A stretch of DNA of 64,000 nucleotides. It comes from Macrostomum lignano (lineage: Eukaryota). The DNA is taken from the NCBI GenBank assembly GCA_002269645.1, contig NIVC01002239.1:14837-78836 (forward strand). Direction: 5' to 3'. This document shows, in pieces, positions 4,549-56,168 of this stretch (position 1 is its first letter; the number at the start of each line of letters is the position of its first letter). Below the pieces are notes generated by a model, which was given only the letters and a program-made list of their open reading frames with translations, made no database searches and was not told the origin of the DNA. The translations under genes and the position numbers were made by a program.

Positions 4549-4549
<1 letters not shown>

Positions 4550-6953: not shown

Positions 6954-7036
6954 NNNNNNNNNNNNNNNNNNNNNNNNNNNNNNNNNNNNNNNNNNNNNNN
7001 NNNNNNNNNNNNNNNNNNNNNNNNNNNNNNNNNNNN
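6954..7036. other. Assembly gap (83 N)
   Basis: Run of N. Confidence 1.
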
Positions 7037-7410
<374 letters not shown>

Positions 7411-9699: not shown

Positions 9700-12600
9700 A
9701 TGAACTGCACTCTGCTGCTGGGCCTCGCCGTCTGCTGCCTGGCACTGAATAGTCTTGTCCAAGCAATCTCTGCTGATGAGGCTCTTCTAAAAGCAATGGG
9801 TCTCAAGTCCATCTACAATCGAGAGGTTCGCCCGGAGCCAGACCTGGACAATGCCAACCTCATTGATGTGTCATTCAACCTGAACAGGCTGGTTAAAGTG
9901 GTACGCTCGTAATCGAACTTCTGAAACTCTTGCCTGAATAAGGATCTTACGTAAACCAGATTTTTAGATTTTTAATAAAGATTTTCTTAGTTTTTTAGCA
10001 ATCAAAATCCAATATTCTCCTTCTTTTCTGGATTTTCGCTGGAGTTTGGGGTCCTACTTGGGATCCAAAGGTCATTGACACACAAGTCATTCATATTCAT
10101 CGCAAATTCTTTTCATGCTTTTCAGGATTCCGCTGCTCAAGAAATTATGCTCCAGATGTGGTTCAACTTGGTGAGTCTTCATCCAATAGACTTAGTTGGG
10201 TAGGCTCTACAATTCCCTCATGAAGATTTGATCGAGCGCAAAGATCTTCGCCCCAAACCCCGGCAGGAGTGGACGGACCCTCGGCTGGCCTGGTTGGGAA
10301 AATTCAACTCAACTTTCGACAATGTGAGCTCGATATTCGTGCCGGCAGACCTGATCTGGCAGTCCGATGTCGGCTTCTTCGATCTGTGAGACCCTTCTGC
10401 ATCATTCTTTAGAGAAACTTTACGAGGAACCTGCTGACTTCATCATTTTTAAACAAATTTCCAAGGCCCACGGGCAGTGCATTCAGAAGGATGTACTTGG
10501 AACACTTTTAAATTATAAAATTATCATCACCTGAAGTCGCTTGATTTAACATTTTCCAATTTTTGGATATGAAACTTTTTCAATGCATTTTGAAATGCTA
10601 CTACTCATTTTACGAGTTGTCCTTGTCCGAAATTTAAAGCTTCATTCGCATTCTAGATTGGATTTCAAGCGAACATCAAGTGAGCGAGTAGTTCTTGTTC
10701 TGAAAAACAATGGCATGGTGCAGTACTCAATCGAGGTTCTCACTCTGTCCAAGTGCGAGATGGACATGGCCGGGTTTCCCTACGACACGCAGACCTGCAC
10801 TCAGCAGGTGGGCTCGGCAGTCCAGACAACGGAGACAATCAGGCTCAAGTTGGAAATTCAGAGCGAGAGGGATACTATAACTACCTATTAGGCTAAGAAT
10901 ACCGACTTCTGCATTCTGAATGTGACAGCGAAACAGACGGTCGATGTTGAGTACGACAAGATCGACTTTACTATAAAGATCAAGGTGAGTTCAACTATGA
11001 AAAAGAAAGCTAACTATCTGTTCAGTGCCCAACTGGCTGAGAATATTGGCAAGGGAATAAAAGTATTATCTAAGCCACGAATCAAAGGGCAGAACTGCAA
11101 CGCGTTTGACTCTCTCGCGAAAAGTACCTGTCTGGATTCGGTTCCGTGAGCGGTCACACAAATTTTGTGTTGCTATCCGTATGCGTTCTCAAGGTTTTGT
11201 GTCCTGGCTGGCTGTGGGTCAACCGTCATATCGCCTTGATACGGCAGAAATGTTCAAAAAGCCCCGCTAACGAAGTAACGAATGCACCTCAATTAGTCAA
11301 AAGCCAAAAAGAGTAAAATGACAGTAAAAGCACGAAATCTAGCAGCAAAGCGATCGGATTTCAATAAAATCTCCTGAAAACTCCTGAAATTTAAAAGCCA
11401 CTGATGGTAACGCTACAGAAAAATGCTTACTGTGTATTTCAGCGTCGAACCACTTTCTACGTGATGAACCTCATCTTGCCCAGCATCCTCCTGCTCGCCA
11501 TCTCAACTCTGGCCTTCTGCCTGCCGCCAGACTGCGGCGAGCGAATCTCGTTCAGCGTCACCATCGTGCTGTCCATGTGCGTGTTCCTGCAGCTCACTAG
11601 CAACTACATACCTGCTCAAAGCAATTCCGTGCCTCTACTCAGTGAGTGCAGCTTCAGCACTTTTTCATTTAGCATCTCTGCTCACTGTCACCCGAATGTA
11701 ATTTTGCATCAGAATAAAATTTTACCCTGAGCCAAGAGTCCTTTTTGGCAGTAATGTTTAAGCGCCGAAGGCAGGTGTTTTTTGGGAACTTGACCAGCTG
11801 AGCACCCCCATACTATTTACTCCCCTCACTCGAGCCCATCGCCGCGAGCACTTAATTAACCTGAGACCTGTTTTGCCAGAGAATAAGTACTTCGTTCACA
11901 GGCACAGCTACCTTCTGCTTCTCTACCTTCTGAGTGGCTAACTTCCCCTTGACCTCTGCTGTATGGCTAACTAACAGCTAATGGCAGCTAAGCAATAATC
12001 TCAAAGGTAGTGCCCCAAACTCAATGCCAGGAAACATTACCGAACACCGAATTTCCTTTGCCGCCAGCCTACTACTGCAGCCTAGCAGTCGGCATGACGA
12101 TGGTCAATGTTCTAGCGAATGCGTTCGTGTTGAACTGCCACTACCGCCGGCTGACGCAGCCCCGGGTTTCCAACTGGCTGATCCGCCTGCTGTTCCTCAA
12201 CCGGTTCGTGGCCCGTCGCAGGCGGCTGTTTGGCATCGATTCGGTGAGCGGCGACGCACTCTGGCCCAGCAATTGCTAAGCATTGCTGTTGGAATAGCAC
12301 GGATGTCAAAAGTTCATGGGGAATAGCTCAAATGCTACCCGATCCCTGGGACATTGTCGGGTTTTTTCAAGCTAGCTATCTGATATGTGCAAAATCTCCT
12401 TATAGCGCACTGCATGCGTTTGCTCTAGGCCTATGAAAATGTCAAAAGTGAAATTTTATTTTGCGTAGGAACTTTAGTTCCAAGAGGGTGCCCGCATGTG
12501 CACTGGCTAGCAGTATATATAGTAGATTTGATGTTGTTAGAAATCTACTCTTTGATGGAACAATGCGCACGATGTCTCACGTGTGTGCTTTTATAGTTAC

Positions 12601-13781
12601 CTGGACTTTTGGGTACGTAGAAACGGAAAAAGATGATTTTTTTCGCATCAAAGGCCAATAAAGCGACTTAATTTGTCTATGCTAGTTAATTGTTCCAGTG
12701 GAACTCCTCCTCTGGAGGAGAAAGGGGGTGGCAATCCCATCGCCAGAATTCCATTCCCTGAAATCCATCAGCCGAAATCCCATGACTTGAATCTTATCTT
12801 TCAAATCGTCTCCAAATCCTCTATAAAACCTTTCAAATCCTTTCAAATACCAAAACTTGTTTTCCGTGTTCACGAAAACTTTATATTAAATGGCCCAGCT
12901 ACTTAACAAATCCCAGACCTTTTTGTTTGGAGTTTGAAATTGAACTTTGAGCAGCCGTTAAATAGATTTCCAACTAAAAGCAGTATCTTTGCACAATCAC
13001 ATGACAAAATGAGAGTTAGAAAGGCTTATAGCCATTTTTTAAACCTAGAATCATAATTACGCACGTATTTAAAGAGGTAGACTACACCTTTTCACGTTCA
13101 ATTTTGAACAAAGTCCAGTTCTAAAAAAACTAGCGGAAATTCAATTCAGACAATTCAGACTGGGGACAATTTTGTCTATGGCTAAACCTCGCTTCCGTAG
13201 CAGAATGTTTTGAACTGGGGTTTGTTGCCCCAGTCTGAATTGTCTGAATTGAATTTCCGCTAGTTTTTTTAGAACTGGACTTTGTTCAAAATTGAACGTG
13301 AAAAGGTGTAGTATTGTTGCATGCACTAGGATCACCCGAAACAGTGAAAACCCGACATGGTAAATAAAGCCAGACGGCCCAACTCAGGCTTCAATCGTTT
13401 TGTTTGAGCAATCTCACGCTAGTTAACCAAACAATTTCGTTTCAAGTACATGTACTTTTCAGACGAGTTGATGCCTCAGTCCTCTTTACTGATTTTCAGC
13501 GCACCAGAAAGGCCGTCAACGCTCTGGATGGCAGAGCGGAGGGCTGTCAGAAACCTCCGGGCGAGTCAGCTGAAGGCAAGGACTCGCCATTGCCGGATGC
13601 CGCTCCCAGAAGGCTCGACTCGGCTTTCCTGCATTGTCATGACAACGATTGGGATGTTGTAGTCTCAGTCACGGACACTGTTTTCTTTCTGCTGTATTTT
13701 TTCTTGACCACGGCCATCATCGTGACTCTGGTGATAATCGAGACCAGGAACTCCAAGGTGAACTGCATCACTGGTGACTGA
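9700..13781 (+). pseudogene. LGIC1: nAChR-like Cys-loop channel subunit, 7 exons (9700-9900, 10126-10170, 10267-10385, 10657-10984, 11443-11641, 12068-12243, 13500-13781), one in-frame TAG at 10889-10891
   Basis: Signal peptide, YNREVRP, WTDPRLAW, WQSDV, Cys-loop CEMDMAGFPYDTQTC, M1-M2 LPPDCGERISFSVTIVLSMCVFLQ, M3 and M4 (DWDVVVSVTDTVFF). All splice sites are GT/AG with matching phases. The stop is the only lesion seen. Confidence 0.85.
13081..13312. mobile_element. MITE with perfect 85-bp terminal inverted repeats, in LGIC1 intron 6
   Basis: 13081-13165 is the exact reverse complement of 13228-13312. TA dinucleotides at 13083-84 and 13309-10 fit a Tc1/mariner-type TA duplication. Confidence 0.85.
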
Positions 13782-16698: not shown

Positions 16699-18371
16699 AT
16701 GCTGTGGGCTGCACTATCAAGCTTCATCGCTCTCTTGCTCTGCCGTGCCGCAGCGGCAGCGGCTGCCTCGGCTTCTCCAGACGAGGCCTTGGAATTGGCG
16801 CTGAAACTGAAATCCGCCTACAACAAGGACGCCAGGCCGCCACCTGACAACGGTTCGGCAAACTTGGTGACCGTCTTTTTCAACCTGAATAATTTGGTTC
16901 GAGTGGTGAGCCTCCAATTTTAATGTGTTTGTGAGCCGATATCATTGCTCTGAGCATGCAGTCTAGCTTGGATCTTTCCAACCCGCAGGACTCGGCAGCG
17001 CAGGAGATCATGCTGCAGGTCTGGTTCAGCCTGGTGAGACTTCTTGTTATTCGATGCGCAGCAATCTCGTAATAAAGTCGAAAAATGTCTTATTAAGATT
17101 TGGGGGCCGTAGCCTAGTGGGTCTAGCGCGGTGCTCTTATGTGCCAGCGGCCCAGGCTCGATTCCTGTGCGTATGAATGCGAACGTATCCGCGCGCTTGT
17201 GTGCCAAGGATCACTGTAGTGTACAGGACGAAAAATTCAAAGATTGCGTAATTTTAGGGGGTGCTACAGTGGTCCTTGTTGTGTGCCTGCTCAGAGGAGT
17301 CGGCGGAATGGGCAGTAATGCCTCTCGCCGGTTGTGTGACAATGTTCACCTGAAGTGCGCCAGGGTGCACACAGCCCCGAGTCCCTGCCTCTAACTAAAA
17401 AACTAAACTTATAAAGATTTCATCTACGTCGGATGATACGCGACCATTTCATAGGTTAAGTGTATTAAAGCTCACAGCAGTAAAATTTACCAACACACAA
17501 ATGTCTCAAGCAACTAGCATTTTTAAAGAAACAACGAGGCTTTGGATGGACGCCTATCTGCAACTGTCAAGTATTTACGCTTTTTTCCTTCCCAGTTTTC
17601 CACAATATCCGAATCTGCATGATAAGAGTTAAAAAGTAACAAATACAAGAGTTAAGACACTCATAGATAGCAACAACCTTCTAACTAAGAGACGATACTT
17701 GGGTAAGTGCATTAGCGCTTCCAGCGTATGTAAAAACTATCGATTTTTTCGAATAAATATCTCATGAAAGACAATTCAATGGGTTTGCATGGCATCACGG
17801 AAGCTTGTTTACGTACTCGTACGTGCCAACACTATTCCCTGCAGTACTGGTTTGACAGCCGCTTGGCCTGGAAAGGAAAATTCAACTCCAGCTTTGACAA
17901 CGTGAGCTCCATTTTCGTGCCAGCCGACCTGCTCTGGCAACCCGACGTGGCCTTTTATGACCTGTAAGTTCGTCCGTACGAACGATTGATGGCACTGATA
18001 AAGGTAGAGAAGTCACTTGTAGATCACAGACACTATAGTACCTGGATAGGCCACTCAGTACATTTGAGTATAAACTTTGAGTTGAGTATGAGATAATTAG
18101 AAGCACTTAAATGTAGTTTAGGTCAAGACTCACCCCTAGCCTCTCTCAATCTTCCGACCGCGTCTTTACACGCTTATTTACGTTTTCATTTTTTTGTCAT
18201 TTTACGATATCTTTTATTTTCTATGCTTCCTAAATATAAGATATATAATATATAGTATAATTGATTACACCTGCCACAATAGGCAGATGTGCAACTGACT
18301 GCTCAGCTATTTTCAGTCATTGCTATCTGAAGGCGCGTACGGCTATTCAGTCCAAGGAAATGGGAGGGTCG

Positions 18372-18416
<45 letters not shown>

Positions 18417-20594
18417 AATAATCAGAAAGGACTTTCTTAAGCTCATTAGCATCGTAATGAACAATGCATTCTAGTCTGGACCTGCGTCGAACATCCAGCG
18501 AAAAGATCGTGTTGGTTGTCAAAAGCGACGGCCTGGTGCAGTACACATCGGAGCTGCTCACCCATTCCAAGTGCGAAATGAATATGGCTGAGTTTCCTTA
18601 CGACACGCAGAGCTGTCACCAGCGGGTGTCCTCGGTGGTGCACACGAACGAGACAATCGCGTTGCGCATTAGGGAATCGAAACCCGGGGACTCGCTGACG
18701 GACTTTCTGGTCAAAAATATCGACTTCTGCATTGTGAATGTCAGTACTGCTAAGTCCATTGACGTGATCTACGATTTTGTGGAGCTCCGTGTTGATATCA
18801 AGGTTCGGTCCCAGTTAGAGGTTACATTTGCCCATGAATGCTTGTTTGATGCGGTCCGTTGGTGATAGATGTCTTTAATGGTGGATGTCTTTGTGATGGA
18901 TGTCTTTGTGATGGATGTCTTTGTGATGGATGTCTCTGTGATGGATGTCTCTGTGATGGATGTCCTTGTGATGGATGTCCTTGTGATGGATGTCTTTGTG
19001 ATGGATGTCTTTGTGATGGATGTCTTTGTGATGGATGTCTTTGTGATGGATGTCTCTGTGATGGATGTCTTTGTGATGGATGTCTTTGATGCATGGATGC
19101 CTTTGTGATGGATTTCTTTGATGCATGGATGCCTTTGTGATGGATGTCTCTGTGATGGATGTCTTTGTGATGGATTTCTTTGATGCATAACAAGAGGCTG
19201 ATGGAGTGATCATGCATGCAGATATTTAGATAGCATAGCACTGTACTAGAGCATCTGTGGGCTAGCGAAAAGATGTCACATAATGTAGGACTTACTGAGA
19301 ATTCCAGAATTTTCCATATCTAGCTCAAGGTTAAAATTTTAATGAGAATAATTTTGCATTCATTCTTAACTCCCGAAAATTATTGACAGCGGAAAACTAC
19401 GTTCTACATGATGAACCTAATTCTGCCCAGCTTCCTACTGCTCGCCATCTCAACTCTGGCCTTCTGTCTCCCACCGGAATGTGGAGAGAGATTGTCCCTG
19501 AGCATCACCATCGTGCTGTCCATGTGCGTGTTTCTGCAGCTGACTGGAAACTTCACGCCAACACAGGGAGACTCGGTGCCTCTTCTAAGTGAGTTCTTCG
19601 TTTTGCCGCAGTAGAAATGTGTCAAGTGTCATGGGGCTCATGGAGGGCTCATAGGGCAGTTGCTAAGATTTCAAAGGCTCATAGGGAACTGCAGGAATTC
19701 TTGGGCTCATGGAGAATCGATGAAATGCCACGGTTCATGGGGGGAATTGCTGAAATTCTGTGGCTCATGTGTTCAGATGCTTTGAGCCAAAGCCCATAGG
19801 GGATCTGATCTTTTAGGCTAGATATTCAGGGCGGATGCTTTTTTGGTTCTAACATCATTTTCCTTAAAAGATTGACAATAGTGACTGTACAAGGTTAAAA
19901 GCCACACGTAGTTTATTCAAAAAAAGATTCTTTCCTTTGTTGCCTCCCCAACGGGGGGGGGGCAGACGAAATTGCTAGTTGCAGTCTAAATCTTCTTAAA
20001 GAACAGCAGCAGAAAGTGTGTTGCTATTAGAAGAAATTGCTTGCAACATTGCAGCCTGGTACTTCAGCCTCGCGGTGCTTCTGACCATGGCTAACCTGGT
20101 TGCCAATGCCTTCGTTCTGAGCTGCCACTTTGAGCAGTTTTCTGAGAACGCTCGAGTCCCCGGCAGTCTCACTCGGCTGCTGTTTCTCAATAGGCTCTTC
20201 TGCGGCCATCCGTCTCGTCGAGAATCTCCGTCGGCACGAAATTCCAATGTGGTGATCGAGCCAACTGCTGCTGAAGTGCGTGACCAACAATCATTTACTG
20301 TGGATTGTTGATTAGCTTTTGCACAGGTGCATGCATTCACATATTTCATTCCAACTCTAGAACACGTCCTCCGACGGAACAGAACTTCGCGTCATCTCTC
20401 GGTTAGGAAAAGCCGAATCTGAAACAACGATGCAACCCCCAAGTTTCAAAAGTGACTGGAGCGCCGTTGTGACCGCCGCTGACCGCTGCTTTTTTGCCTT
20501 CTTCTTCTCGTTGACAATGTCGCTAGCGCTGGCGATTGCGATTCTGGATGCCATGAACTCCAAGACCAGCTGCATCGTGGGCAAGAATAATTAA
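16699..20594 (+). CDS. LGIC2: apparently intact nAChR-like Cys-loop subunit, ~442 aa, 7 exons (16699-16905, 16989-17033, 17845-17963, 18475-18802, 19390-19588, 20055-20251, 20361-20594)
   Basis: Signal peptide, YNKDARP, WFDSRLAW, WQPDV, CEMNMAEFPYDTQSC, LPPECGERLSLSITIVLSMCVFLQ, M4 DWSAVVTAADRCFF. Exons 2-5 are 45/119/328/199 bp as in LGIC1. The exon-6 donor (GTGATC) is the least certain boundary. Confidence 0.9.
17102..17410 (+). mobile_element. tRNA-derived SINE, family A copy 2 (internally deleted, interrupted by a micro-MITE), in LGIC2 intron 2
   Basis: Head GGGGCCGTAGCCTAGTGG (A box) ... GGCTCGATTCC (B box). Body matches the other copies. A-rich tail. Confidence 0.85.
17205..17278. mobile_element. 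74-bp micro-MITE with 15-bp TIRs and 8-bp target-site duplication (hAT- or P-like)
   Basis: TIR CAAGGATCACTGTAG / CTACAGTGGTCCTTG (14/15). TTGTGTGC is duplicated at 17197-17204 and 17279-17286, whereas the other SINE copies carry a single copy of this site. Confidence 0.88.
18262..18410 (-). mobile_element. Degenerate 3' fragment of SINE family B
   Basis: TTGATTACACCTGC...ATCTGAAGGC.CGTACGG...CACACAC resembles 50343-50430. Confidence 0.45.
18866..19186. repeat. 15-bp minisatellite (GATGGATGTCTTTGT)n in LGIC2 intron 4
   Basis: Direct reading. Confidence 0.95.
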
Positions 20595-21408: not shown

Positions 21409-22962
21409 ATGTCATACCAGACTCCCCAAGGCTTCATCGTTGCCATTCTGTACTTTGTATCCTTCACTGCCGCTGAGACCTCGCCTGACGAAGCTCTGTC
21501 ATTGGCACTGGGCTTGAAGACCAGCTACAACAAGGACGCGCGTCCTCCGCCCGATGCTGGCTCAGCGAATCAAATCGGCGTTTTCTTTAACCTGAACAGC
21601 CTCGCCAGAGTGGTGAGACTGATCGTTTTTAATCGTCCTTCATCGGCATAATTGGTTATAGCTACCTGTAGTTACAGCCAAAAATCAAGGCACACCCCAT
21701 GGGGTACATCAGCCCCGATTTACTCATTGGCAAGCATGCATAGCACACTCTGCGCCTTGGATGCTGTGAATCGCACGACAGGCTCCTGCAGGCCAATTTT
21801 TCTGTACGGACCGCAAATGATCGCGCGACTGTCTGTAAGACACAACAAAATTGTATCCAAGACCATTGATGACCGATTTTACTGCCCACAGAACTCAGCG
21901 ACAGGGGAGATGACTCTGCAAGTCTGGTTTAATTTGGTATGACTAATTTGCAATTAATAAGTTTCTGTTAAACTTTCCCACCCCGAAGTTGCAGCAGACG
22001 TACACATAAAGTGGCCAAGGTAAACTCAACAATTCTGGGTAATTAGAGAAAATTGGAATAAATGCTCCTCTAGTTTGGAGTTCCGACGGACCTCCAGCGA
22101 CAACATTGTTCTAGTTGTCGAAAACAACGGCTGGGTGTCACACACTGCGGAGTTTCTGACCCAGTCCAAGTGCGCAATGAATATGGCTAGCTTTCCCTAC
22201 GACACGCAGAGCTGTCGACAGCTCGTGTCCTCAGTGGTGCACTCAAATGACACCGTTAAGCTGTTCATTCGTCCAACAAAATCAGCGGACTCGCTGACAA
22301 CCTACCTGGATAGGAACAATGATTTCTGCATTGTCAACGTCAGCACAGCCAAGTCAGTAGATGTGCAATACGAATATGTTGAGCTCCGCGTTGCTATGAA
22401 GGTTTTGTGCTCAGGTTCTTCTCGATTGGTATTTTATGCTGACATTAGATTGTCAATACAATCATATCATATACAATCATATATGTTTCTCAATGGATTC
22501 GTCTGCGGGCGCCGATTTCGTCGAGAGCCGTCCGGAAGTCAAACTTTTGACAGTGTCGCGCAACGAAGCTCCATCGGAGTAAGTGTTCGTTTACTGCTAG
22601 TGCCGCTCTATCAGGAGAAGCAAAATCAAATACGCTCATATGTCACGGTCCCACAGGTCAGTGATGCTGACAGCAAAGAAATGAGCGATATCTCGTCGCG
22701 ACGAACCGTCAACTTCGACTCGCAGTTGGAGCAGCCTTCGCGTTGCCGGGCCACTGATGTCAACAGCTGGAGCGCTGTCGTGGCCACTGCTGAACGCTGC
22801 TTTTTCGCGATCTTTTTCGGCCTGACGCTGGCTTTGGCGCTGACGCTGGCGATCCTGGGGAGGCAGCGAACTCCCAGACCGTCTGCATCACTGGCAGAGA
22901 GAAGTAGCCGGCCAAGGGACGTCTGGGTTTCTAAAATGCAGTGTCTGATAAAACTGGAGTAG
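21409..22962 (+). pseudogene. LGIC3: Cys-loop pseudogene lacking exon 3 and M1-M3 (exons 21409-21612, 21892-21936, 22074-22401, remnant ~22483-22578, 22657-22907/22962)
   Basis: Exon 1 (YNKDARP), the 45-bp exon, the 328-bp Cys-loop exon (CAMNMASFPYDTQSC), the post-M3 FLNGF remnant and M4 (SWSAVVATAERCFF) are present. No WxDxRLxW/WQPD exon and no GER-M2 exon lie between them. A frameshift near 22858 hides the ancestral tail EAANSQTVCITGREK*. Confidence 0.85.
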
Positions 22963-26303: not shown

Positions 26304-28769
26304 ATGCCGCAGTCTCCGCTATCAAGCTTCATAGTTTTCTTGCTCTGCCGTGCCGCGGCGGCTGCCTCAGTGTCCCCGGATGAGGCCCTGAAAACGGCGC
26401 TGAATTTAAATTCCGACTACAACAAAGACGTCCGGCCGCCACCGGACAACGGCTCAGCCAACTTGGTGACCGTCTTGTTCAACTTGAAAAGCCTGGCTCA
26501 TGTGGTGAGTACTTCGGCTTTGTCGATTTTTTGTGAGAACACGTTGAATTTTCGAGCAGATCGTGAGCATTAAATTATTTCTAACCAAACAATGAAGGAC
26601 TCGGCAACGCAGGAGATCGTGCTGCAACCCTGGTTCAATTTGGTACGTGACTCATTCTTTTTATTAGAGGCAGGGGGGTTGTGTGCACCCTGGCGCAATT
26701 TAAGCGACATAGGCACACAACCGGCGAGAGGCATTACTGCCCATTCCGCCGATTCCCCTGAGCAGGCATACAAGCGCGCGGATACGTTACGCAGGAACAC
26801 CCTCACACAGGAGTGTACAGCGGCACCAACATTATTTATTGTTAGGCATGTACACTTCACTGCGCCTTGGGGGGGTTGGCTCTCAAGGCCGTTAATTGCA
26901 CAAGCGAGCCAAGCCAAGATTCCAATCCAGCCCCAAATTAATGTGGCTGCACTTGGAATCGAGCCTGGGTCGCGGCACACCAGAGCAGCTGCGCTACCGC
27001 TGGGCTACGGCCCCCCCTGTACGTGACTCATAAGTTCAGTGCTGCCGCAGAGACATTGACATATCGAGTTTTATTGCATCATACTCACGGTGCAGCCATG
27101 AGCTATCGATTCATTTAATTTGCACTTTCACTACAGTACTAGCGAGACAGCCGCCTGGCCTGGAAAGGAAAATTCAACTCTACCTTCGATAACGTGAGCT
27201 CCATTTTTGTACCAGCCAGTCTGCTCTGGCAACCGGATGTGGCCTTCTGCAACCTGTAAGTGCGACACTTTTTCCTTGGGCTTGATCATTCCTATGCAAT
27301 TGCAGCCATACCGCTTTGCTAAGTCTCCCAATGGCACCCCGATTGTTCTCTTAGAGAAACTTCAAGATAATGGAGTAACGGTGACATTCATCTAATGGTA
27401 CTCATGTTGACCTTTCTCATACTCACCTTTCAGCCTGCACTTCCGGCGCACCTCCAGCGATAAAGTTTTCCTGACTGTGAGCAGCGACGGCATGGTGCTG
27501 TTCCTTGTTGAGCTGCTCTCCTGGTCCAAGTGCGAAATGAATATGGCCAACTTTTCCTATGACATGCAGATCTGCCACCAGCGCGTATCTTCGGTGGTGC
27601 ACACGAGAAAAACCACTGCGCATCGAGCCTGGACCACCTGGAATCACGCCTTCCCTCTTCAAGAACCACGACTTCTGCGTGATGAACGTCAGCGTTTCAA
27701 ATTCTATCGATAAGTGGAACTACGATATTGTTCAGCTGCAGGTGGAAATAAAGGTAGAAACTTCTCAGAATTTGGTTGAGTTGGAACGGGGATCACACAC
27801 TTTTTGTGGACTCCCCTGTCATAGTCCCCGTTTTTTCGCAGAGCCAGTTTCACCTTTGACACTTTCAGCGTAAAGCACTATTCTACTTCATGAACCTGAT
27901 CATTCGAGTCTCGTGCTGCTCTACATCTCTACCCTGGTCTTCTGCCTGCCGCCCGAGTGCGGAGAGCGAATATCATTGAGATTCACCATCGTGCTGTCTA
28001 TGTGCGTGTTCCTGCAGCTCAGCAGCAACTATATGCCTCCACAGGGGGACTCTGTGCCTCTGCTCAGTGAGTTTCGAGCTAATTTCACTCCAACACTTTG
28101 TTCGCTGATAGTGAACTACAGGCTGGAATATTGAGACTCATGACCTATTTGTCCTCCTCCAATTTCCAGCCTGGTACTTCAGCCTCGCGGTCTTTCTGAC
28201 AATGCTTCACTTGATTGCCAACATTTTCGTACTGAGCTGCTACTTTGAGCATTCGTCCGAGAATGAGCATACCAAAGTCCCAAGCCGGCTAACGCGACTT
28301 CTGTTTCTCAATAAGTTTGAATGCGCCCGGCTGCAGTGCAGAATGTGCTACCAGGTTCGAAACCACGGCGAAACCGCCGCTGTACGGAGCTCGGTGAGAG
28401 TAAGGGAGATACGGAGACCTGGGTTGGATTTTGTTAAGCCTGCCAAGCCTGTGTCGGATTTGGCAGACCTGCAAGTTTCTGTGTCCATTTGCGGTTAAAA
28501 ATTGGCACCCCATTCGCAGGAATCCAACGAGAGCGAGTTGAACGTCGTCTCGCCCAGGCGACCAGCTACGCCAAGTCAACCGCAGGCGGAGCAGACTCCG
28601 CGTTGCCGGGACAACGACCCTCGCAAAGAATGGATCCCCATTGCTGTTCGCCGCCGACCGCTGCTTCTTCGCTGTCTTCTTCAGCCTGAAGCTGGCGCTG
28701 ACGCTGACGCTGTTAATCCTGGAGATCACGAACTCGCGGACCAACTGCGACATGTCGAGTAATGATTGA
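26304..28769 (+). pseudogene. LGIC4: Cys-loop pseudogene, 7 exons (26304-26504, 26598-26642, 27137-27255, 27434-27753, 27869-28066, 28170-28393, 28520-28769)
   Basis: Close paralogue of LGIC2. Lesions: TGG>TAG at 27140-42, exon 4 is 320 bp vs 328, exon 5 is 198 vs 199, frameshift near 28640, FPYD>FSYD. Confidence 0.9.
26655..27014 (-). mobile_element. tRNA-derived SINE, family A copy 3 (most complete), in LGIC4 intron 2
   Basis: The minus strand reads GGGGCCGTAGCCCAGCGG (A box) ... GGCTCGATTCC (B box), then the shared body and an A-rich tail. Confidence 0.87.
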
Positions 28770-34169: not shown

Positions 34170-36596
34170 ATGCTGCTACTAGGCCTAATTTTGATCTGCG
34201 CTGTCACCGCGACCGCCACGGTGCCAGATGTCTCCTCTGATGAGCGAATTGCCGCGGCACTGCGCTTAAAGTCTGCCAACGGCTACAACTCGGATGTGAG
34301 ACCGCCACCGGATAATGGGACGGCTAATCTGGTCCGGGTGCACACCAACTTTAATAGTCTGGTGGCTGTCGTGAGTTTTGGACGATATCAACTAATGAAC
34401 TCGACATATGTACGCAAATGTTCCCACATTTACTCATTAATTATTCATTATTTCTGCTGTTCAGAATTCCGCATCTCAGGAGGTCAGTCTACTCCTGTGG
34501 CTTACACTGGTAAGACATATTTAGAGACCGCGAATCACTCTCTAATATTCTGCAGATTTTTCAGGATCAGCAACAGGTAAAAAGTCATAAACTTTTTTCC
34601 AGTCCTGGACAGACCGCCGACTTGCCTGGCACGGTCGCTTCAACGACAGTTTGGACAGCGAGACGGCGGTCTACTTTCCGGCCAGGCTGCTGTGGCTACC
34701 GGATGTGTCTTTCATCGATCTGTGAGACCGGGATGTGTTCGTTACCATTTTGATTCTCACTAGCTGCTCTGTTCTACTAGGTAGATACTCGTTTGTGTAT
34801 TAATTAATATAAATGAAAAAAAATCAATGAGTCCATTGGTTGTTTATACGAGTGTACAGTCTGCAATGTGGATACCCACTTTGCTTTTGTATATTCCTCT
34901 AACTGGTAAGTAGAAGCCCTCTATAGAATATTACTGGGACTTTGTACAACATTTTTCTTGCGGATTCAACGAGTTGACGATGCGGCATTACTGAAGCATT
35001 TTAAGAGTAAGCAAATCGTGTGTCTGAACTGCATGGTTAATGGAAGCTCTAATAGACGTTACTAAACACAAGAGCAATAAAGAAGCAATCCACGGGATGC
35101 TTGCAACGTTACACTGTCCAACCAAAACTTGCAGCTTGTTCATACAGCGGGTGTCATTTAGCAACGCAATGGCTCACGTTAGCTCTCAGGGACCGGTAAT
35201 GTACACCTCCCAGTACGTGATTACCAGCAAGTGCCCAATGAGCATGTTCGAGTTTCCCTATGACAAGCAGCGCTGCGTAGTGCCCATCTCGTCAGCCATT
35301 CATTCGAAGCAGGTGCTGGCTTTGCACATCGGAGCCTACCTAGAGAACGACTCCATCACGAAGTACCTGGCCCGCAACGACGAGTTTTGCATTACAGGAG
35401 CGACAATCAGGAAGACTGTGGACTACTACTTTGATATTCTGCAGTTTGCCATCACTTTCAAGGTAAGAATATTGCGTCTGTATCTAAAAAATTTAATTGG
35501 CTTGCAAAATTTTTAGGCAACATCACGTTCCAATATTTTTTTTCAGAGACGGCCCATTTTCTACGTGATAAACCTAATCCTGCCCAGCCTCCTGCTGCTC
35601 GCCATCTCCACCGTCACCTTCCGACTGCCACCGGACTGCGGCGAGCGGATGTCATTCAGCATCACCATCGTGCTGTCCATGTGCGTGTTCCTGCAGATGG
35701 TGAATGAGCACACGCCCACGCAGAGTGAATCCGTCCCTCTGCTAAGTGAGTTCTGTGGACATAAATCCAGATATCTGCTGCAGTTAATTGCACAGGAGTT
35801 GTGTCACTCGACAAAAAACGATATAAATCTATTCGTTTATGATTTACGTTTATGTTGATGAAAATGATTTGTAATGATTTTTGAGTAACAACAGCAAAGT
35901 TACTCAAGTTAAAATTCGCAAAAGAAATTTAGCTATAAACTTAGAGTGGCTTGGGTTATCACGTTCTTTGTTGAGTTGTTTTTTAATGCGAGTCTATCTG
36001 CATACCAGACGACCTTGTGAATGAATGACTGCATACTTACTTGCCGGACCTCGTACGAGCTAGTTTGTTGTTTATTCTTCTTATCAATGTAGCACGAGCT
36101 CCGGCATCCTTTACTTGTACCCACGGCTTTGTATGTACCACTTCCTCTCGACGTTAACCCACTCGATTTCAAATTTTTCTCATAGGCACTCGCCCACTCT
36201 CTTCTATTTCCTGGTCCAGCCTGCTACTGCACTCTGGCGGTGGTGATGACAATGACCGTCGTCTTGGGCAACGCCTTCGTTCTCAGCTGCCACAGCCGGT
36301 GTTGCCGCTCCGCTCCCCCGGGACGTCTGCTCCGGACGCTGTTCCTTCACTCGTTCGTCGCTCGTCGGAGCCGTCGGCAGCCGGAAGCCGACGGTTCAGT
36401 CCGGCAGAGCTTGTCGCCCGACAACGAGTCTGAGACCGCCTGCGGGAACGCTCTGCGCTGTCAATGGAGCACCATAATTTCAGGCGTTGACACCTGCCTG
36501 TTTGCGTTCTATTTTGGCATCACCGTGTCTTTGGTGATAGCACTGGCCGCTATTGGACTTGTTACAGATAGCCAGAAGTGCATCAATGAGGACTAA
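34170..36596 (+). CDS. LGIC5: apparently intact nAChR-like subunit, ~422 aa, 6 exons (34170-34370, 34465-34509, 34603-34721, 35135-35462, 35547-35745, 36220-36596)
   Basis: Signal peptide, YNSDVRP, WTDRRLAW, WLPDV, CPMSMFEFPYDKQRC, LPPDCGERMSFSITIVLSMCVFLQ. M3 and M4 are in one exon. Exon sizes are 201/45/119/328/199 as in the paralogues. Confidence 0.92.
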
Positions 36597-50019: not shown

Positions 50020-53000
50020 TCAGTAGGCGCTGTACTGGCAGGCTCGCACAGAGCTCGTCTCAACGCAGCAAACTGCGACGGCTATGGTGAGAGTGGCGGA
50101 CAGGAACAGGGCGAACAGACACCTGTCAGCGGCCGCAACCACGATCAGCCATTCGTTGACTTCTCTGCCGGCTGCCTCCTCCGTCTCGGCGTCAGAGCTG
50201 CCCGAAGTCTTGTTGGCTGGTAGTACCCTCTGTGGAAATGGGACGGCACAATGTAACGATGCAATGTTACACCAGGAGCTGATCTTGACGTTTTATCAGA
50301 GAAATAGCGAGTGGGAACTAAGAAACTGTTCAATAATAATAATTGATTACACCTGCACTAATCGGGACAGATCGACAGCTCAGCCGCAGCTATTGCGCGG
50401 CGCATCTGAAGGCTGCGTACGGTCGTCACACACACCCTCAATTACCCCAGCTAATGCTGACACCCATTTTACAGCTGGATAAACTGAAGCAATGCAGAGT
50501 TAGGTGTCTTGCTCAAGGAAACAAATTGTTCCAGTGGGATCGACCACTAGGCTACAACCCCCAATGCAACCAACCACCATAGATGGCGCCAACCATCATT
50601 CACTTGACCTAATTACTATATAGTTATCTATATAAAAGGCTAAACGTTGAATGCGAGTGAGTCCGTAACTTTGCGGTTATAACCAGCTAGCATATAAGTT
50701 ACTAAAGAGTTTGAATCTCACTTTTAGATACACATTTAATAGCTCAATTTATCTTGCTTAACTCTTCAAAAGCTTCTTATAAGTCCGAGTTCTCCCCTCT
50801 ATAGATTTATATTCAACTCGCAGGCTTAGTGGCGTGCACAATAATTTATTTAACCCTAAGGGTCGACAATATTTGCTGTCTTGGTGGCCGCCCCTGTCTC
50901 TTGGTGGCCGCCCCTGTCTCTTGGTGGGCGCCCTGTCTCTTGGTGGGTGCCCCTGTCTCTTGGTTGGCGCCCCTGTCTCCTTGTGGCTCAAATTTAGCTT
51001 CTGTCAGATGCCTTTCGAGATTGTCGCGTGACTCACCGCGTCTGCCGTTCGCTTGCAATTCCCAGTAATGCAGCGGTTGAGAAACAGCAGCCGGACCAGC
51101 GGACTGAACACCCGCCTGCCGCCCCGCTGCAGCTTGAAGTGGCAGTCGAGCACGAACACATTGCCGAGCAGGCTGCCCATGGTCAGCATGGCCACCGCGC
51201 TGCAGTGATAGGCTGAAATTTGATTAAGAAGATGACTACTATAAGTAGCTCGAAACGCTTTTAACAGTAGGAATACCAAGCCATTTTTTCGCCCGTCGAA
51301 CTACCAAGAGAAGGGGGGAATCCCCCTGACCATTTTTTTGCTGCGCCGGAACGGAGTAACGCAGGCACACGAAATTCAAGAAAACGGGCCAACTTTTTGT
51401 TGCGCACCTTCTCAAACAAGAATCAAGTCGCCAGATCTCCGGACCGTTGAGATATTCGACGATTCTGCCAGAAGGTCGGATTTTTCCCATAAGCGCCAGT
51501 GTATTCAGTGCACCCCTGTGCGCCAGTCAGCACTGCGCCTCAGTGCAGCCTTGCCAAGCCTCCAAATTTCATCAGCACGTAGACCACATGTGTCTGCATC
51601 AGCTCTGACTTCGTTGGTCACTAGCCTTCACCCAGGCGGAGCTTCTGGACTTTCAACAGGTGGCACCAGGTGACTATGGACACCCTGATACGAATTTCTC
51701 TAGTTTCGCTGATCAAGCCTCGACAGTGGGCAAAATCAACTGCTGGACATCCTCAGCTGGTCTGTCAAGCATTCCGTCATCACCTCGACGCCGTCGGCAC
51801 CTTCAACAGATGACACAAGATGACTATGAACATCCTGTTGCAAATATGTCAGATTTTTCTTATCAAGCTTCAATAATGGGCAAGCCTCAACCGACGGACA
51901 TTCTCAGATAGTCTCTCGAGCATTCTATCATCACCCCGACGCCGTCGGCTCCTTCAACAGATGACAACAGGTGACAATGGACACGCTGTTGCGAATTTCT
52001 TTGATGTCGCTGACCAACATCAATAATAGGCAAACTTTAACTTCTGGTCGTTCTCAGCTATACTCTCAAACAGTCTATCATCACCGGACATAATTAAGTA
52101 AACTTGATGACGTAATTTGCTAATTAAACTGTAAATTGAACAGAATCTTCGCGAAGAAAAAATTACTAGAAATTATCCAATTTTCTGTTCGGAATGAAGA
52201 TCAATTCATAATATACTGGATATCTAGTCTTGTGTCTTAAAAATTGCTAAAATTGTTAACAATAAAAATATTCTCTTTTGGGTGTCTATAGTCGGTTTCG
52301 TCTTCTTGAAGGTGCCGACGACGGCTGAATGACGACCGGATGCTTGAAAAACTAGTTGAGGATACCTAGCAGTAGAGGCTTGCCCATTATTGAAGATTGA
52401 TCAGAACAGTCTAACATATTTGCAACAGGATGCCCATAATCGCCTGGTGTAATCTGTTGAAGGTGCCGACGGTGTCGGGGTGTTGACGGAATGTTTGAGA
52501 GACTAGCTGAGGATGCCCAGCAGTTGATTTTTGCTCACTGTCAAGGCTTGATCGGCGAAACTAGAGAAATCTGCATCAGGCTGTCCATAGTCACTTGGTG
52601 CCACCTGCTGAAGGTCCAGAAGCTCCGCCTGGGTAAAGGCTAGTGACCAACGAAGTCAGAGCTGATGCAGACACATGTGGTCTACGTGCTGATGAAATTT
52701 GGAGGCTTGGCGAGGCTGCACTGAGGCGCAGTGCTGACTGGCGCACAGGGGTGCACTGAATACACTGGCGCTTATGGGAAAAATCCGACCTTCTGGCATA
52801 ATCGTCGAATATCTCGACGGTCCGGAGGGCTGGCGACTTGATTCTTGTTTGAGAAGGTGCGCAACAAAAAATTAGCCCGTTTTCTTGAATTTCGTGTGCC
52901 TGCGTTACTCCGTTCCGGCGCAGCAAAAAAATGTCAGGGGGGGGGGGGAATTCCATCCTCTTGGTAGTTCTACTGTTAATACTGGCTTCACGCGAAAGTA

Positions 53001-56000
53001 CGAGAAAAATAACACTACTGAGATTGGACCTTTTCATTTCTTCGGATGAAAGGCTAATCCTTACAATACTTCCGTATGACTTGCCTGTTATAAATTTTAC
53101 AAAAATGCGTTGTAAAAGCAAAGAACCAATAAAACTGGCAATCATATATTTAAAGATAAGTGTTGTATCTTCTTTCGATGTGTGTGTGTGTGTGTATGCA
53201 TCCTTGCACTTTTGTACATTCTACCGAAAGTTTTGTATCAGGATCCAAAAACGGAGTTCTGAAATTTATTTAACTCACTGAGCAGAGGCACAGCTTCGCT
53301 CTGCGTTGGGGTGTAGCTGCCAGCCAGCTGCAGGAACACGCACATCGACAGCACAATGGTGACGCTCAGGGACATTCTCTCGCCGCATTCCGGTGGCAGG
53401 CGAAATACCAGGGTTGAGATGGCGAGCAGCAGGAGGCTGGGTATGACGATGTTCACCAGGTAGAATGTTGATCGGCGCTTTGGTGAACGAAATCAAATTA
53501 TTAATTTTCGAGTGAGTTCCACAGTAAATTATCCAAAATTTACTTTGTCTCAGGTGACAACCTAGGAGGCCACCCTGTCCGTTTGCTTTCTACACCTTTC
53601 TACAGCTTCATTAACCTCTTCCACTTTGAAAACTCCTCTCGGATCCCTTCTGTCAGATTCCTCCCCCCCCGAACCCTTTCCTTTCGACCCCTGCCCTTCC
53701 GACCTATTCCCCTCCAACCTCTTCCCCTCTGACCCCTTCCCCTCTGACCCCTTCCCCTCTGACCCCTTCCCTCTGACCCCTTCCCCTCTGACCCCTTCCC
53801 CTCTGACCCCTTCCCCTCTGACCCCTTCCCCTCCGACCCCTTCCCCTCTGACCCCTTCCCCTCTGACCCCTTCCCTTCTGACCCTTCCCCTCTGACCCCT
53901 TCCCCTCTGACCCCTTCCCCTCCGACCCCTTCCCCTCTGACCCCTTCCCCTCTGACCCCTTCCCTTCTGACCCTTCCCTCTGACCCCTTCCCCTCTGACC
54001 CCTTCCCCTCTGACCCCTTCCCCTCTGACCCCTTCCCCTCTGACCCCTTCCCCTCTGACCCCTTCCCTTCTGACCCTTCCCCTCTGACCCCTTCCCCTCT
54101 GACCCCTTCCCCTCTGACCCCTTCCCCTCTGACCCCTTCCCCTCTGACCCCTTCCCCTCTGACCCCTTCCCTTCTGACCCCTTCCCCTCTGACCCCTTCC
54201 CCTCTGACCCCTTCCCCTCTGACCCCTTCCCTTCTGACCCTTCCCCTCCAACTCTTCCCCTCCAACTCTTCCCCTCCAACTCTTCCCCTCCAACTCTTCC
54301 CCTCCAACTCTTCCCCTCCGATCCCTTCCCCCCGACCCAGTAAGCAGCGCACCGAGAAGACGACAACCAGCCGAACGAATGGAAATTCGCCTTCAGCTCC
54401 TTCCTCAGTGAAGACGCTCTGCACGCAGAACTCGTGGCTGCCTGTGGCTCCGCTAAACTCCACCTCGCTGGCCGGCATCATCCGCACTCTCACAGAGGCC
54501 GAGCTCTGCATAATCGAGCCGATCTTGACGCCGCAACGCTGCGCATCGTATGGGAAATTGCGCATGTCAAAGCGGCACTTGAAGCGGACCATGAACTGCT
54601 GGCTGTGTGCCACGCCGCCTGCGCTGGTCAGGTTTAGCAGAACGCGGTCGCCCGATACCCGCTGAAGGCTCAAGCTGCAGGCCTCAGTGAGTGCAAAAGT
54701 ACTTTTATTTTGTAGGCACGTAAATTTCACTATTCTATTTGACTGGCTTCAGCAGGGGCTGTGCATCGATTTTTAAGCTTTTAATTTCATCATCACTCTT
54801 GCAGGATTGGAGAGACAGAGAACGTACTTTAGTTTCTAGACTTCTGCATAGACAGTAACTGTAATTTAGCCCTTATTCTGTAAATGGCTTAGATAGTGAA
54901 TGTACTTTTAGTCTTCTTAGGTTTAGTTAAAGCCAGGGGGCTGTGTGCACCCTGGCGCACTTTAAGCGACATTGTCGCACAACCGGCGAGAGGCATTGCT
55001 GCCCATTCCGCCGACTCCCCTGAGCAGGCACACAAGCGCGCGGATACGTACGCAGTCACACGCACAGGCACTCACACAGGAGTGCACAGCGGCCCTAACT
55101 TTATTTATCGTTAGGCATGTACACTTCACTTTAGTTCCTGGTCTATGATTGGATATGCATCTCTATAAAAAATTTCCACCTGTCTAAGAAGGACACGTCC
55201 GGCTGCCAGACGAGCTCCGCAGGTGCAAACACGGTTCCGATGCTGTCAAAGCTGGAGTTGAATCGTCCCCGCCAAGCCAGACGATTGTCGTTCCAGACCT
55301 GAAGTTTTGAGATTTGAATTTTCAAGTCAATTTTCATACGGAGCAGCAGCAGCGAATTGAATATTCATTAGCTCACCAGAGTAAGCCACACCTGCAAGGT
55401 CAACTCCTGCGCTGTTGAGTCCTGAAACAATGAGGCTCCCCAGTTTAAGCAATGTCATTAAATAGAAACTAATTAGAAGTCTTAAATTTGAGGCCGAACA
55501 AAATTTGTCTGGTAAACAATTGCGACTTGCTGAACCCAAGCAGACTGCTTCTAGAGTTACAAGACATTATACAAAGCAAATGGTCAGTATTCGGACACCA
55601 ATGTTAGACATTTGGACTCCAAACACTAGAAATCAGTGGTGAATTTTCGGACACTAGACTTACAGATCAGTGTTAGACTATTGAACACCAGAAATCGGTG
55701 TAGGAGTTTACGGACACTAAGGATCAGTTTTTTAGATTTGGACACTTGAAATCAGTGTTGCAATTTTGGACACTAAATATCGGTGTTGGAGTTTCGCTAG
55801 AGATCGGTGTTGGAGTTTCGGACACTAGAGATCGGTGTTGGAGTTTCGGACACTAGAGATCGGTGTTGGAGTTTCGGACACTAGAGATATTTGCTGTTTA
55901 AATTCCGATCCCAAGCCCAGCTCCTCACCACAGCGGCCAAGGCGGACATAATTGCCTGCACTATGACGGTGTTGGCCGAGCCATTGTCCGGCTTCGGCCG

Positions 56001-56168
56001 GACAGCCGGTGAGTAGCTTCCGTCCCCGGCCGACTGGCCAAGCAGCCCAAGTCGCGTCATCAGCGCCTGCTCAAGTGATGGCGTCAGCTCCGCTAAGGCG
56101 GACGGCATCGCCAGCGACAGCAGCGCTGCAGCCGGTAAGATGAGGCTACAAAGAGGTTGGGTTGTCAT
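50020..56168 (-). CDS. LGIC6: apparently intact nAChR-like subunit, ~436 aa, 7 exons (56168-55929, 55421-55377, 55298-55180, 54674-54353, 53477-53279, 51212-51037, 50229-50020)
   Basis: Signal peptide, YSPAVRP, WNDNRLAW, WQPDV, CRFDMRNFPYDAQRC, LPPECGERMSLSVTIVLSMCVFLQ, M3, M4 NEWLIVVAAADRCLF. All GT/AG sites and phases are consistent. Confidence 0.9.
50343..50561 (-). mobile_element. SINE family B with CORE-like domain, in LGIC6 intron 6
   Basis: 50462-50520 CCCATTTTACAGCTGGATAAACTGAAGC...GTTAGGTGTCTTGCTCAAGG aligns by eye with the recalled MIR/CORE consensus. The minus-strand head GGGGTTGTAGCCTAGTGG is a tRNA A box. Confidence 0.7.
50878..50985. repeat. Short second array of the 20-bp GGGCGCCCCTGTCTCTTGGT repeat
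   Basis: About 5 units of the same motif as 48944-49728. Confidence 0.85.
51298..52970. mobile_element. Foldback-type element: ~1.7 kb with ~650-bp imperfect inverted arms, in LGIC6 intron 5
   Basis: 51298-~51950 is the reverse complement of ~52300-52970 (GAACTACCAAGAG / CTCTTGGTAGTTC). The ORF track shows near-identical peptides on opposite strands. The arms contain internal sub-repeats. No TSD found. Confidence 0.85.
53670..54335. repeat. Pyrimidine-rich 15-bp minisatellite (CCCCTTCCCCTCTGA)n in LGIC6 intron 4
   Basis: Direct reading. Confidence 0.95.
54934..55130 (-). mobile_element. SINE family A copy 4 (5'-truncated), in LGIC6 intron 3
   Basis: Body matches 14003-14210. No tRNA head. 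Confidence 0.82.
55580..55890. repeat. Degenerate ~28-bp repeat (CGGACACTAGAGATCGGTGTTGGAGTTT)n in LGIC6 intron 1
   Basis: About 3 near-perfect units at 55800-55890, preceded by diverged units. Confidence 0.8.

What the first reader, a model, noticed from the sequence alone, without database searches (positions are those of the whole stretch)
10892..13781. Family-specific extra cysteine pair: possible disulfide tying the post-M4 tail to the extracellular domain
Seen: all six have Cys right after the beta8-beta9 aromatic (DFC, DFC, DFC, DFC, EFC, EFC), where nAChRs have E-W-x. All six also have one Cys in the short extracellular tail after M4: KVNCITGD, KTSCIVGKNN, TVCITGREK (hidden frame of LGIC3), RTNCDMSSND, QKCINED, RACQYSAY. 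These survive despite low identity around them. Inference: the two Cys form a disulfide linking M4 to the ECD at the gating interface, which is not a standard Cys-loop feature as far as I recall.
Basis: partly seen in the sequence, partly recalled or inferred. Interest (0 to 1): 0.7.

Follow-up and report, generated by a model that had tools for sequence, protein, structure and literature searches.

The report
Conserved cysteine pair in flatworm receptor genes
Six tandem ion-channel receptor genes of the flatworm Macrostomum lignano all carry two extra extracellular cysteines that look like a disulfide pinning the tail after the last membrane helix to the base of the ligand-binding domain. The bond is inferred from sequence only.

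Summary
All six Cys-loop receptor paralogs in the window have a TGC Cys codon right after the beta8-beta9 aromatic ((D/E)-F-C) and one in the short post-M4 tail.

Only three copies are intact here (G2, G5, G6). G1 has an in-frame TAG at 10889-10891, one codon before the finding's start. G3 has lost exons and is frameshifted. G4 has a TAG and frameshifts.

An exhaustive profile search found the (D/E)-(F/Y)-C cysteine only in M. lignano proteins. All 10 non-redundant members with a natural C-terminus also keep the tail Cys, at 25-63% pairwise identity, with poorly conserved flanks. None of about 200 other nAChR-like units has the beta9 Cys.

Core members have exactly three ECD cysteines plus one tail Cys, so the beta9 Cys would otherwise be unpaired. 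A disulfide between the two is the best reading.

The SG-SG distance could not be measured: the AlphaFold model was poor and the tool gives no coordinates. A same-subunit bond and a neighbour-subunit bond both remain possible.

The closest precedent is human ZAC, whose C-tail Cys394 bonds Cys289 in the M2-M3 loop. I rate this a new variant of a known kind, of moderate interest.

The parts
9700..13781 (+). G1, Cys-loop receptor paralog. Exons 9700-9900, 10126-10170, 10267-10385, 10657-10984, 11443-11641, 12068-12243, 13500-13781. In-frame TAG at 10889-10891. Beta9 Cys codon 10910-10912; tail Cys codon 13764-13766.
16699..20594 (+). G2, intact paralog, 450 aa. Exons 16699-16905, 16989-17033, 17845-17963, 18475-18802, 19390-19588, 20055-20275, 20361-20594. 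Beta9 Cys 18728-18730; tail Cys 20571-20573. 97% identical to the M. lignano UniRef protein P0001.
21409..22907 (+). G3, decayed copy. Exon 3 and the M1-M3 exons are missing, and there is a frameshift at the end of M4. Beta9 Cys 22327-22329. The tail Cys 22884-22886 is only in the shifted frame.
26304..28769 (+). G4, copy with TAG for the conserved Trp (about 27140) and at least three frameshifts. Beta9 Cys 27676-27678; tail Cys 28746-28748. Another public copy (P0007) is intact at several of these sites.
34170..36596 (+). G5, intact paralog, 422 aa. Exons 34170-34370, 34465-34509, 34603-34721, 35135-35462, 35547-35745, 36220-36596. Beta9 Cys 35388-35390; tail Cys 36579-36581.
50020..56168 (-). 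G6, intact paralog, 436 aa. Exons 56168-55929, 55421-55377, 55298-55180, 54674-54353, 53477-53279, 51212-51037, 50229-50020. Beta9 Cys 54425-54427; tail Cys 50038-50040.

Best explanation
The window holds a tandem cluster of six paralogs of a Macrostomum lignano-specific family of orphan, cation-type Cys-loop (nAChR/5-HT3-like) receptor subunits.

The family carries two extra extracellular cysteines. One is at the first outward-facing position of strand beta9, directly after the conserved beta8-beta9 aromatic (G2 Cys209). The other lies 5-8 residues after the end of M4 (G2 Cys444).

The most likely reading is that these two cysteines form a disulfide with each other. It would staple the extracellular end of the lipid-facing M4 helix to the base of the beta9-beta10 hairpin, next to pre-M1, at the interface between the ligand-binding and pore domains.

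I think the bond is most likely within one subunit. A bond to the beta9 Cys of the neighbouring subunit is the main alternative topology.

The probable role is to lock the post-M4 tail in place. That would stabilise folding and assembly and stiffen the M4/ECD coupling, and it might make the channel sensitive to redox state.

Shown here: the gene models, both cysteines, their strict co-conservation and the cysteine parity. Inferred: the bond itself, its topology and its function.
For: 1. Both Cys columns are invariant in 10 of 10 non-redundant members at 25-63% pairwise identity, and their flanks are poorly conserved.

2. P0011 and P0047, the most divergent members, lack the family's other conserved cysteines (PPxCGER, SMCVF) but keep this pair.

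3. The beta9 Cys occurs only in M. lignano proteins among the 150 best hits of an exhaustive profile search. No intact member has one cysteine without the other.

4. Core members have exactly three ECD cysteines (the Cys-loop pair plus Cys209) and one tail Cys. P0011 has an extra pair but an even total. Without the proposed bond there would be two conserved unpaired extracellular cysteines.

5. The strand pattern is F208 (core), C209, I/V210 (core), variable 211. The relatives have Asp or Glu at this position. Both facts indicate an exposed side chain.

6. Outside the family, tail cysteines are rare (5 of 55 complete units). They are enriched in units with an odd ECD Cys count (3/5 against 7/50, Fisher p=0.037).

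7. A Lingula alpha9-like subunit has a pre-M1 Cys (LIVCRK), cross-strand from the beta9 start, together with a tail Cys.

8. A C-tail disulfide at this interface has been shown experimentally in human ZAC (PMC11707272).
Against: No distance or structure is available. The AlphaFold model had pLDDT 47, and the tool gives no coordinates.

All carriers belong to one lineage of one species. Co-conservation could therefore reflect one origin plus two independent constraints, and the Fisher tests are not phylogenetically independent.

P0047 has an odd number of extracellular cysteines and lacks the second Cys-loop Cys, so parity is not universal.

Functional post-M4 cysteines without a known partner exist, for example human epsilon C470 (PMC9260303).

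Three of the six copies in this window are damaged.
Confidence: 0.6

Rival explanations
1. The two cysteines do bond to each other, but across the subunit interface. The tail Cys of one subunit links to the beta9 Cys of its neighbour and covalently rings the pentamer.
For: The beta8-beta9 loop lies at the subunit interface. In human ZAC the C-tail leaves M4, bonds the M2-M3 loop two residues later and then contacts the beta8'-beta9' loop of the complementary protomer (PMC11707272). A Cys 5-8 residues after M4 could therefore reach a neighbour (tail lengths).
Against: The Lingula analogue has its extra Cys in its own pre-M1 and a tail Cys only about 4 residues after M4, which suits a same-subunit bond better. 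No covalently ringed pLGIC is known.
Confidence: 0.2
2. The two cysteines are conserved for separate reasons, or together as free thiols. They could be a metal or redox sensing site at the ECD-TMD interface, or the tail Cys could be needed for maturation as in human epsilon C470. No bond forms between them.
For: Epsilon C470 in the post-M4 tail matters for surface expression without a described partner (PMC9260303). ZAC shows that atypical Cys-loop receptors with a short loop C can be gated by metal ions at non-canonical sites. This family also has a short loop C and lacks the loop B Trp. P0047 has an odd extracellular Cys count.
Against: Two invariant unpaired cysteines in an oxidising extracellular compartment would be unusual. 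Core members have exactly the count that makes one extra pair. The two arise and persist together.
Confidence: 0.12
3. The tail Cys forms a disulfide with another molecule. This could be a second pentamer, as in the Torpedo delta-delta dimer, or an auxiliary protein. The beta9 Cys would be unrelated.
For: In Torpedo, the penultimate delta Cys500 links neighbouring receptors through a disulfide near the membrane (PMC3820380).
Against: This leaves the invariant beta9 Cys unexplained and unpaired. In a homomer, five reactive tails would give uncontrolled networks. In Torpedo only one subunit type carries the Cys.
Confidence: 0.05
4. The pattern has no functional meaning. The six copies are recent duplicates and partly pseudogenes, so shared cysteines only reflect shared ancestry.
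For: G1, G3 and G4 carry stops, deletions or frameshifts. G1-G4 are 48-63% identical to one another.
Against: The pair is also invariant in intact, far more divergent paralogs elsewhere in the genome at 25-33% identity. There most other positions, including other family cysteines, have changed.
Confidence: 0.03

Closest known systems
Human zinc-activated channel (ZAC): C-tail disulfide Cys394-Cys289 (PMC11707272)
   Same: A cysteine just after M4 is covalently anchored at the ECD-TMD gating interface. [quoted passage not shown] The pore motif is cation-type. In ZAC the tail is functionally important, because deleting it gives constitutive activity.
   Different: The partner in ZAC is in the M2-M3 loop, whereas here it is at the start of beta9 in the ECD. 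The ZAC tail continues about 18 residues into the orthosteric site, whereas here only 0-6 residues follow the Cys. The flatworm proteins score best against 5-HT3A and nAChR chains, and ZAC is not among the 60 best PDB matches. This is an analogue, not an orthologue.
Torpedo nAChR delta subunit penultimate Cys500 (delta-delta dimer; PMC3820380)
   Same: A post-M4 extracellular Cys forms a disulfide close to the membrane.
   Different: The Torpedo bond links two receptors through one subunit type and has no ECD partner. Here a second invariant ECD Cys accompanies the tail Cys in every subunit.
Human muscle nAChR epsilon C470 (PMC9260303, citing Ealing et al. 2002)
   Same: A post-M4 tail Cys is important for maturation and surface expression in some cell types.
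   Different: No partner cysteine is described. It is a single subunit in a heteromer, and it is dispensable in oocytes.
Alpha7 nAChR C-terminal latch, and the ACR-16 tail/Cys-loop interaction (PMC9318448, PMC10443321)
   Same: The post-M4 segment docks on the base of the ECD around the Cys-loop and influences folding, assembly and function.
   Different: The contact is non-covalent and involves no cysteine.
Second ECD disulfides of other Cys-loop receptors (vicinal loop C Cys of nAChR alpha subunits; loop C pair of GlyR/GluCl). This comparison rests on my own knowledge.
   Same: These are lineage-specific extra disulfides added to the Cys-loop fold.
   Different: Both of their cysteines lie within loop C of the ECD. 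The flatworm family has a loop C six residues shorter with no cysteines.

Membership tests
Cys-loop (pentameric ligand-gated ion channel) superfamily | Neur_chan_LBD plus Neur_chan_memb domains | tested here: met
   PF02931 (98-120 bits) and PF02932 (70-76 bits) are found in G2, G5 and G6, above the curated cut-offs.
Cys-loop (pentameric ligand-gated ion channel) superfamily | C-x13-C Cys-loop with the FPxD motif, and four transmembrane helices with an extracellular C-terminus | tested here: met
   All six copies have C-x13-C with FPYD (FSYD in G4). M1-M4 align with 5-HT3A and nAChR. The extracellular C-terminus follows from the N-out, four-helix topology of the superfamily, which is established knowledge.
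Cation-selective branch (nAChR / 5-HT3 type) | Glu at M2 -1' (G-E-R/K) rather than P-A-R | tested here: met
   CGER precedes M2 in all copies that have an M2. The best PDB matches are 5-HT3A, alpha7 and alpha4. Ion selectivity itself was not measured.
Acetylcholine-binding nAChR alpha-type subunit | Vicinal Cys-Cys and aromatic residues in loop C, plus the loop B Trp | tested here: not met
   Loop C is six residues shorter and has no Cys. Loop B has A, V or I in place of Trp in the core members. The ligand is unknown.
ZAC (zinc-activated channel) family | Closest sequence relationship to ZAC, and a C-tail Cys paired with an M2-M3 loop Cys | tested here: not met
   No ZAC chain is among the 60 best PDB sequence matches. 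The M2-M3 loop has no Cys in any member.
Post-M4-to-ECD disulfide (the proposed feature) | The two cysteines are co-conserved across the family and absent together elsewhere | tested here: met
   10 of 10 non-redundant members have both. No non-family unit (about 200) has the beta9 Cys.
Post-M4-to-ECD disulfide (the proposed feature) | SG-SG distance compatible with a disulfide, or chemical evidence of the bond | not testable with these tools
   The AlphaFold run had pLDDT 47 and gave no coordinates.

The most novel reading that the evidence does not exclude
Covalent stapling of the post-M4 tail to the base of the beta9-beta10 hairpin may be a recurrent, independently evolved solution in lophotrochozoan nAChR-like subunits. 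Three candidates support this: the Macrostomum family (Cys after the beta8-beta9 aromatic), a Lingula alpha9-like subunit (pre-M1 Cys plus tail Cys), and an unassigned ENA protein (Cys higher on beta9 plus a longer tail). If so, ZAC's C-tail disulfide would be one case of a wider, unrecognised class of M4-ECD covalent couplings that tune gating or assembly.
Probability: 0.25. Interest if true: 0.6.

Novelty: new variant of a known kind. Interest (0 to 1): 0.45.

Why it matters
M4 and its tail are thought to pass lipid and folding signals to the gating interface of pentameric channels. How much the post-M4/ECD contact matters differs between receptors and is debated.

A natural family in which this contact is covalent would be a clean test case. 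Reducing the bond or mutating either Cys should reveal what the contact does for assembly and gating.

It would also be the second kind of C-tail disulfide in the superfamily after ZAC, whose authors described theirs as unique. The family is specific to a laboratory flatworm and has a degenerate acetylcholine site, so it is also an orphan receptor group awaiting a ligand.

Tried and rejected
- The word-indexed homologue search was run with G2 and then with a six-sequence profile. It returned only five proteins each time, too few for a co-conservation test.
I used the public M. lignano proteins P0001-P0003 as the profile instead.
- AlphaFold2 on P0001 with the only admissible five-row alignment gave mean pLDDT 47. 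I did not run fold searches on it because matches to such a model would be meaningless.
- The tool reports no coordinates, so the SG-SG distance would still be unknown.
- Literature searches for a described post-M4-to-ECD disulfide in flatworm or other pLGICs found none beyond ZAC. The schistosome 'Cys-less' LGIC paper is unrelated. A search on epsilon C470 disulfide partners was unproductive.
- I considered that the tail Cys might pair with an M2-M3 or M3-top Cys. I rejected this because no such Cys is conserved.
- I considered that the apparent frameshifts in G4 might be assembly errors. Another public copy is intact at several sites, so the pseudogene status of G1 and G4 stays provisional. 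The exon losses in G3 are large deletions.
Full report
**What the region is.** The window is eukaryotic DNA with short GT-AG introns. A tblastn of the G1 exons against the window shows six copies of one gene structure. I built gene models by hand from the junction sequences.

- G2 (16699-20594, +), G5 (34170-36596, +) and G6 (56168-50020, -) are intact open reading frames of 450, 422 and 436 aa. All introns are GT-AG.
- G1 (9700-13781, +) is the gene under the finding's coordinates. It has the same structure but an in-frame TAG at 10889-10891, where the paralogs have Leu. This lies inside one continuous exon, one codon before the finding's start and six codons before the Cys.
- G3 (about 21409-22907) has lost exon 3 and the exons for M1-M3. 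It is also frameshifted at the end of M4, so its tail Cys is only in a shifted frame.
- G4 (about 26304-28769) has TAG in place of the conserved Trp of W-x-D and at least three frameshifts.

A public protein from another copy of this locus (P0007) is intact at several of the G3 and G4 sites. Some lesions may therefore be differences between homeologous copies or assembly errors, not fixed pseudogenisation.

**Organism and family.** G2 is 97% identical to a UniRef protein of the free-living flatworm Macrostomum lignano. G2, G5 and G6 carry Pfam Neur_chan_LBD and Neur_chan_memb. Their best solved relatives are 5-HT3A and the alpha7 and alpha4 nAChR subunits (E about 1e-38).

They have a C-x13-C Cys-loop with FPYD and a cation-type G-E-R before M2. 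Loop C is six residues shorter than in alpha7 and has no cysteines. The loop B Trp is replaced by A, V or I. The acetylcholine site is therefore degenerate and the ligand is unknown.

**The observation.** In the alignment of the six copies, every one has (D/E)-F-C after the beta8-beta9 aromatic and one Cys in the post-M4 tail. All twelve codons are TGC.

**Co-conservation in wider homologues.** The word-indexed search was too insensitive, returning five hits. The exhaustive profile search found 12,602 hits and listed the best 150. Many of these are fused models of tandem genes, so I split them into 218 receptor units and aligned them to a family HMM.

A Cys at the G2-209 position occurs only in M. 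lignano proteins: P0001, P0002, P0003, P0006, P0007, P0008, P0009/P0160, P0011/P0155 and P0047. Every such unit with a natural C-terminus also has a tail Cys. The exceptions are truncated models or models fused to the next gene, where the stop codon and tail were spliced out.

In a non-redundant alignment of 10 members at 25-63% pairwise identity, both Cys columns are invariant. Neighbouring columns have pair identities of 0.03-0.64, and only 37 of 421 columns are invariant.

P0011 (about 32% identity) and P0047 (about 27%) are the most divergent members. They have lost the family's other characteristic cysteines (PPxCGER, SMCVF) but keep this pair. Among 55 complete non-family units, none has the beta9 Cys and five have a Cys somewhere in the tail. 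All carriers belong to one lineage, so this is persistence of a pair after probably one origin. It is not repeated co-gain, and the Fisher p-values are not phylogenetically independent.

**Other evidence for pairing.**

- Core members have exactly three cysteines in the mature ECD (the Cys-loop pair and Cys209) and one in the tail. P0011 has an additional pair and an even total. Without a 209-444 bond there would be two invariant unpaired extracellular cysteines.
- The strand pattern is F208, C209, I/V210, variable 211. Relatives have Asp or Glu at this position. This places the Cys side chain on the exposed face at the bottom of the outer sheet, next to the end of beta10 and pre-M1 (sheet topology from established pLGIC structures).
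- The tail Cys lies 5-8 residues beyond the last hydrophobic M4 residue. That is long enough to reach the ECD base.
- Outside the family, a tail Cys is enriched in units with an odd ECD Cys count (3/5 against 7/50, p=0.037, small numbers).
- A Lingula anatina alpha9-like subunit has a pre-M1 Cys (LIVCRK), cross-strand from the beta9 start, with a tail Cys four residues after M4.
- An unassigned ENA protein (P0125) has a Cys seven residues further up beta9 with a tail Cys about 15 residues after M4.

These last two are anecdotal, but they fit the same geometry.

**What could not be tested.** The five-row alignment gave a poor model with mean pLDDT 47, and no coordinates are returned.

The topology also remains open. 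The beta8-beta9 loop sits at the subunit interface. In human ZAC the C-tail runs from M4 to the M2-M3 loop and then to the beta8'-beta9' loop of the complementary protomer. A bond to the neighbour's Cys209 is therefore conceivable as well as one within the subunit.

**Comparison with known systems.**

- The nearest precedent is human ZAC. There Cys394, two residues after M4, bonds Cys289 in the M2-M3 loop. This was verified by a 3C-cleavage assay, tail deletion gives constitutive activity, and the authors state that no such bond had been seen in any other pLGIC (PMC11707272).
- In Torpedo, the penultimate delta Cys500 links two receptors (PMC3820380).
- Human epsilon C470 in post-M4 matters for maturation in HEK cells and muscle (PMC9260303).
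- Non-covalent docking of post-M4 on the Cys-loop affects folding and function in alpha7 and ACR-16, but is dispensable in muscle nAChR.

The flatworm pair differs from all of these in its partner site, the start of beta9 in the ECD. The family is not a ZAC orthologue. I found no description of this pair in the literature library.

**Verdict.** My confidence is as follows.

| Reading | Confidence |
|---|---|
| The two cysteines bond to each other, either topology (best explanation) | about 0.6 |
| ... across the subunit interface to a neighbour, as a share of that 0.6 | about 0.2 |
| No mutual bond (free thiols or separate roles) | about 0.12 |
| Tail Cys bonds another molecule | about 0.05 |
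| No functional meaning | about 0.03 |

Within the 0.6, a same-subunit bond is the more likely topology. This is a new variant of a known kind, a C-tail disulfide in a Cys-loop receptor, found in a lineage-specific orphan family. It is moderately interesting and easy to test at the bench.

Noticed in passing
window 10889-10891: There is an in-frame TAG inside exon 4 of G1, one codon before the finding's start. The paralogs have Leu (CTG) there. G1 is otherwise intact, so this is a young pseudogene, a polymorphism or a base error.
   Followed up: partly
window 21409-22907 (G3) and 26304-28769 (G4): G3 lacks exon 3 and the M1-M3 exons. G4 has TAG for the conserved Trp plus at least three frameshifts, some next to short homopolymers. 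A public protein from another copy of the locus (P0007) is intact at several of these sites.
   Followed up: partly
window 6157-6953 and 6954-7036: Positions 6157-6953 are a 98% identical copy of the G1 5' region (9001-9810, including the first 37 codons). The copy ends at an 83-base run of N, so it is probably an assembly artefact at a scaffold gap.
   Followed up: partly
window 57727-64000: A 30-bp satellite (about 209 copies, 92% matches) with strong GC skew fills the last 6.3 kb of the window.
   Followed up: no
window 2833-3511, 4032-4549, 7037-7410, 18862-19182, 44607-46125, 48940-49726, 53686-54331: There are many micro- and minisatellites: (CAGA)n, (AGAT)n of 1.5 kb, and 15-23 bp units. 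Some lie inside introns of G2 and G6.
   Followed up: no
window 39536-40288 (-) and 47424-48302 (-): Two ORFs match C-type lectin domains (Pfam Lectin_C) between G5 and G6. The 47424-48302 match (20.8 bits) is just below Pfam's 22.6-bit cut-off, so it is provisional. The public model P0008 fuses a G6-like receptor to a C-type lectin, so this neighbourhood is shared with another copy of the locus.
   Followed up: partly
window 31568-33495 (-): ORFs with a SAP domain and a weak reverse-transcriptase match suggest a retroelement remnant between G4 and G5.
   Followed up: no
G2 residues 264 and 279 (all copies with M1-M2): The core family has two further cysteines: one in the M1-M2 loop (PP-E/D-C-GER, position -3') and one in M2 (SMCVF, about 12'). 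Both are absent from the divergent members P0011 and P0047 and from ordinary nAChRs.
   Followed up: partly
G1, G2, G5 and G6 loop B and loop C (e.g. G2 residues 174-180 and 214-224): The loop B Trp is replaced by A, V or I, and loop C is six residues shorter with no vicinal Cys. The canonical ACh/5-HT site is degenerate, much as described for ZAC, and the ligand is unknown.
   Followed up: partly
P0075 (Lingula anatina XP_013380777) and P0125 (ENA, unassigned): Outside the family, P0075 has a pre-M1 Cys (LIVCRK) plus a tail Cys (TPACHED). P0125 has a Cys seven residues after the beta8-beta9 Trp plus a tail Cys about 15 residues after M4. Both have an odd ECD Cys count and may be independent analogues of the pair.
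   Followed up: partly
P0047 (M. lignano UniRef A0A1I8G5P5): This divergent member has Val in place of the second Cys-loop Cys and two other ECD cysteines, giving an odd extracellular total. It keeps the loop B Trp. This could be a real variant or a model or sequence error.
   Followed up: no
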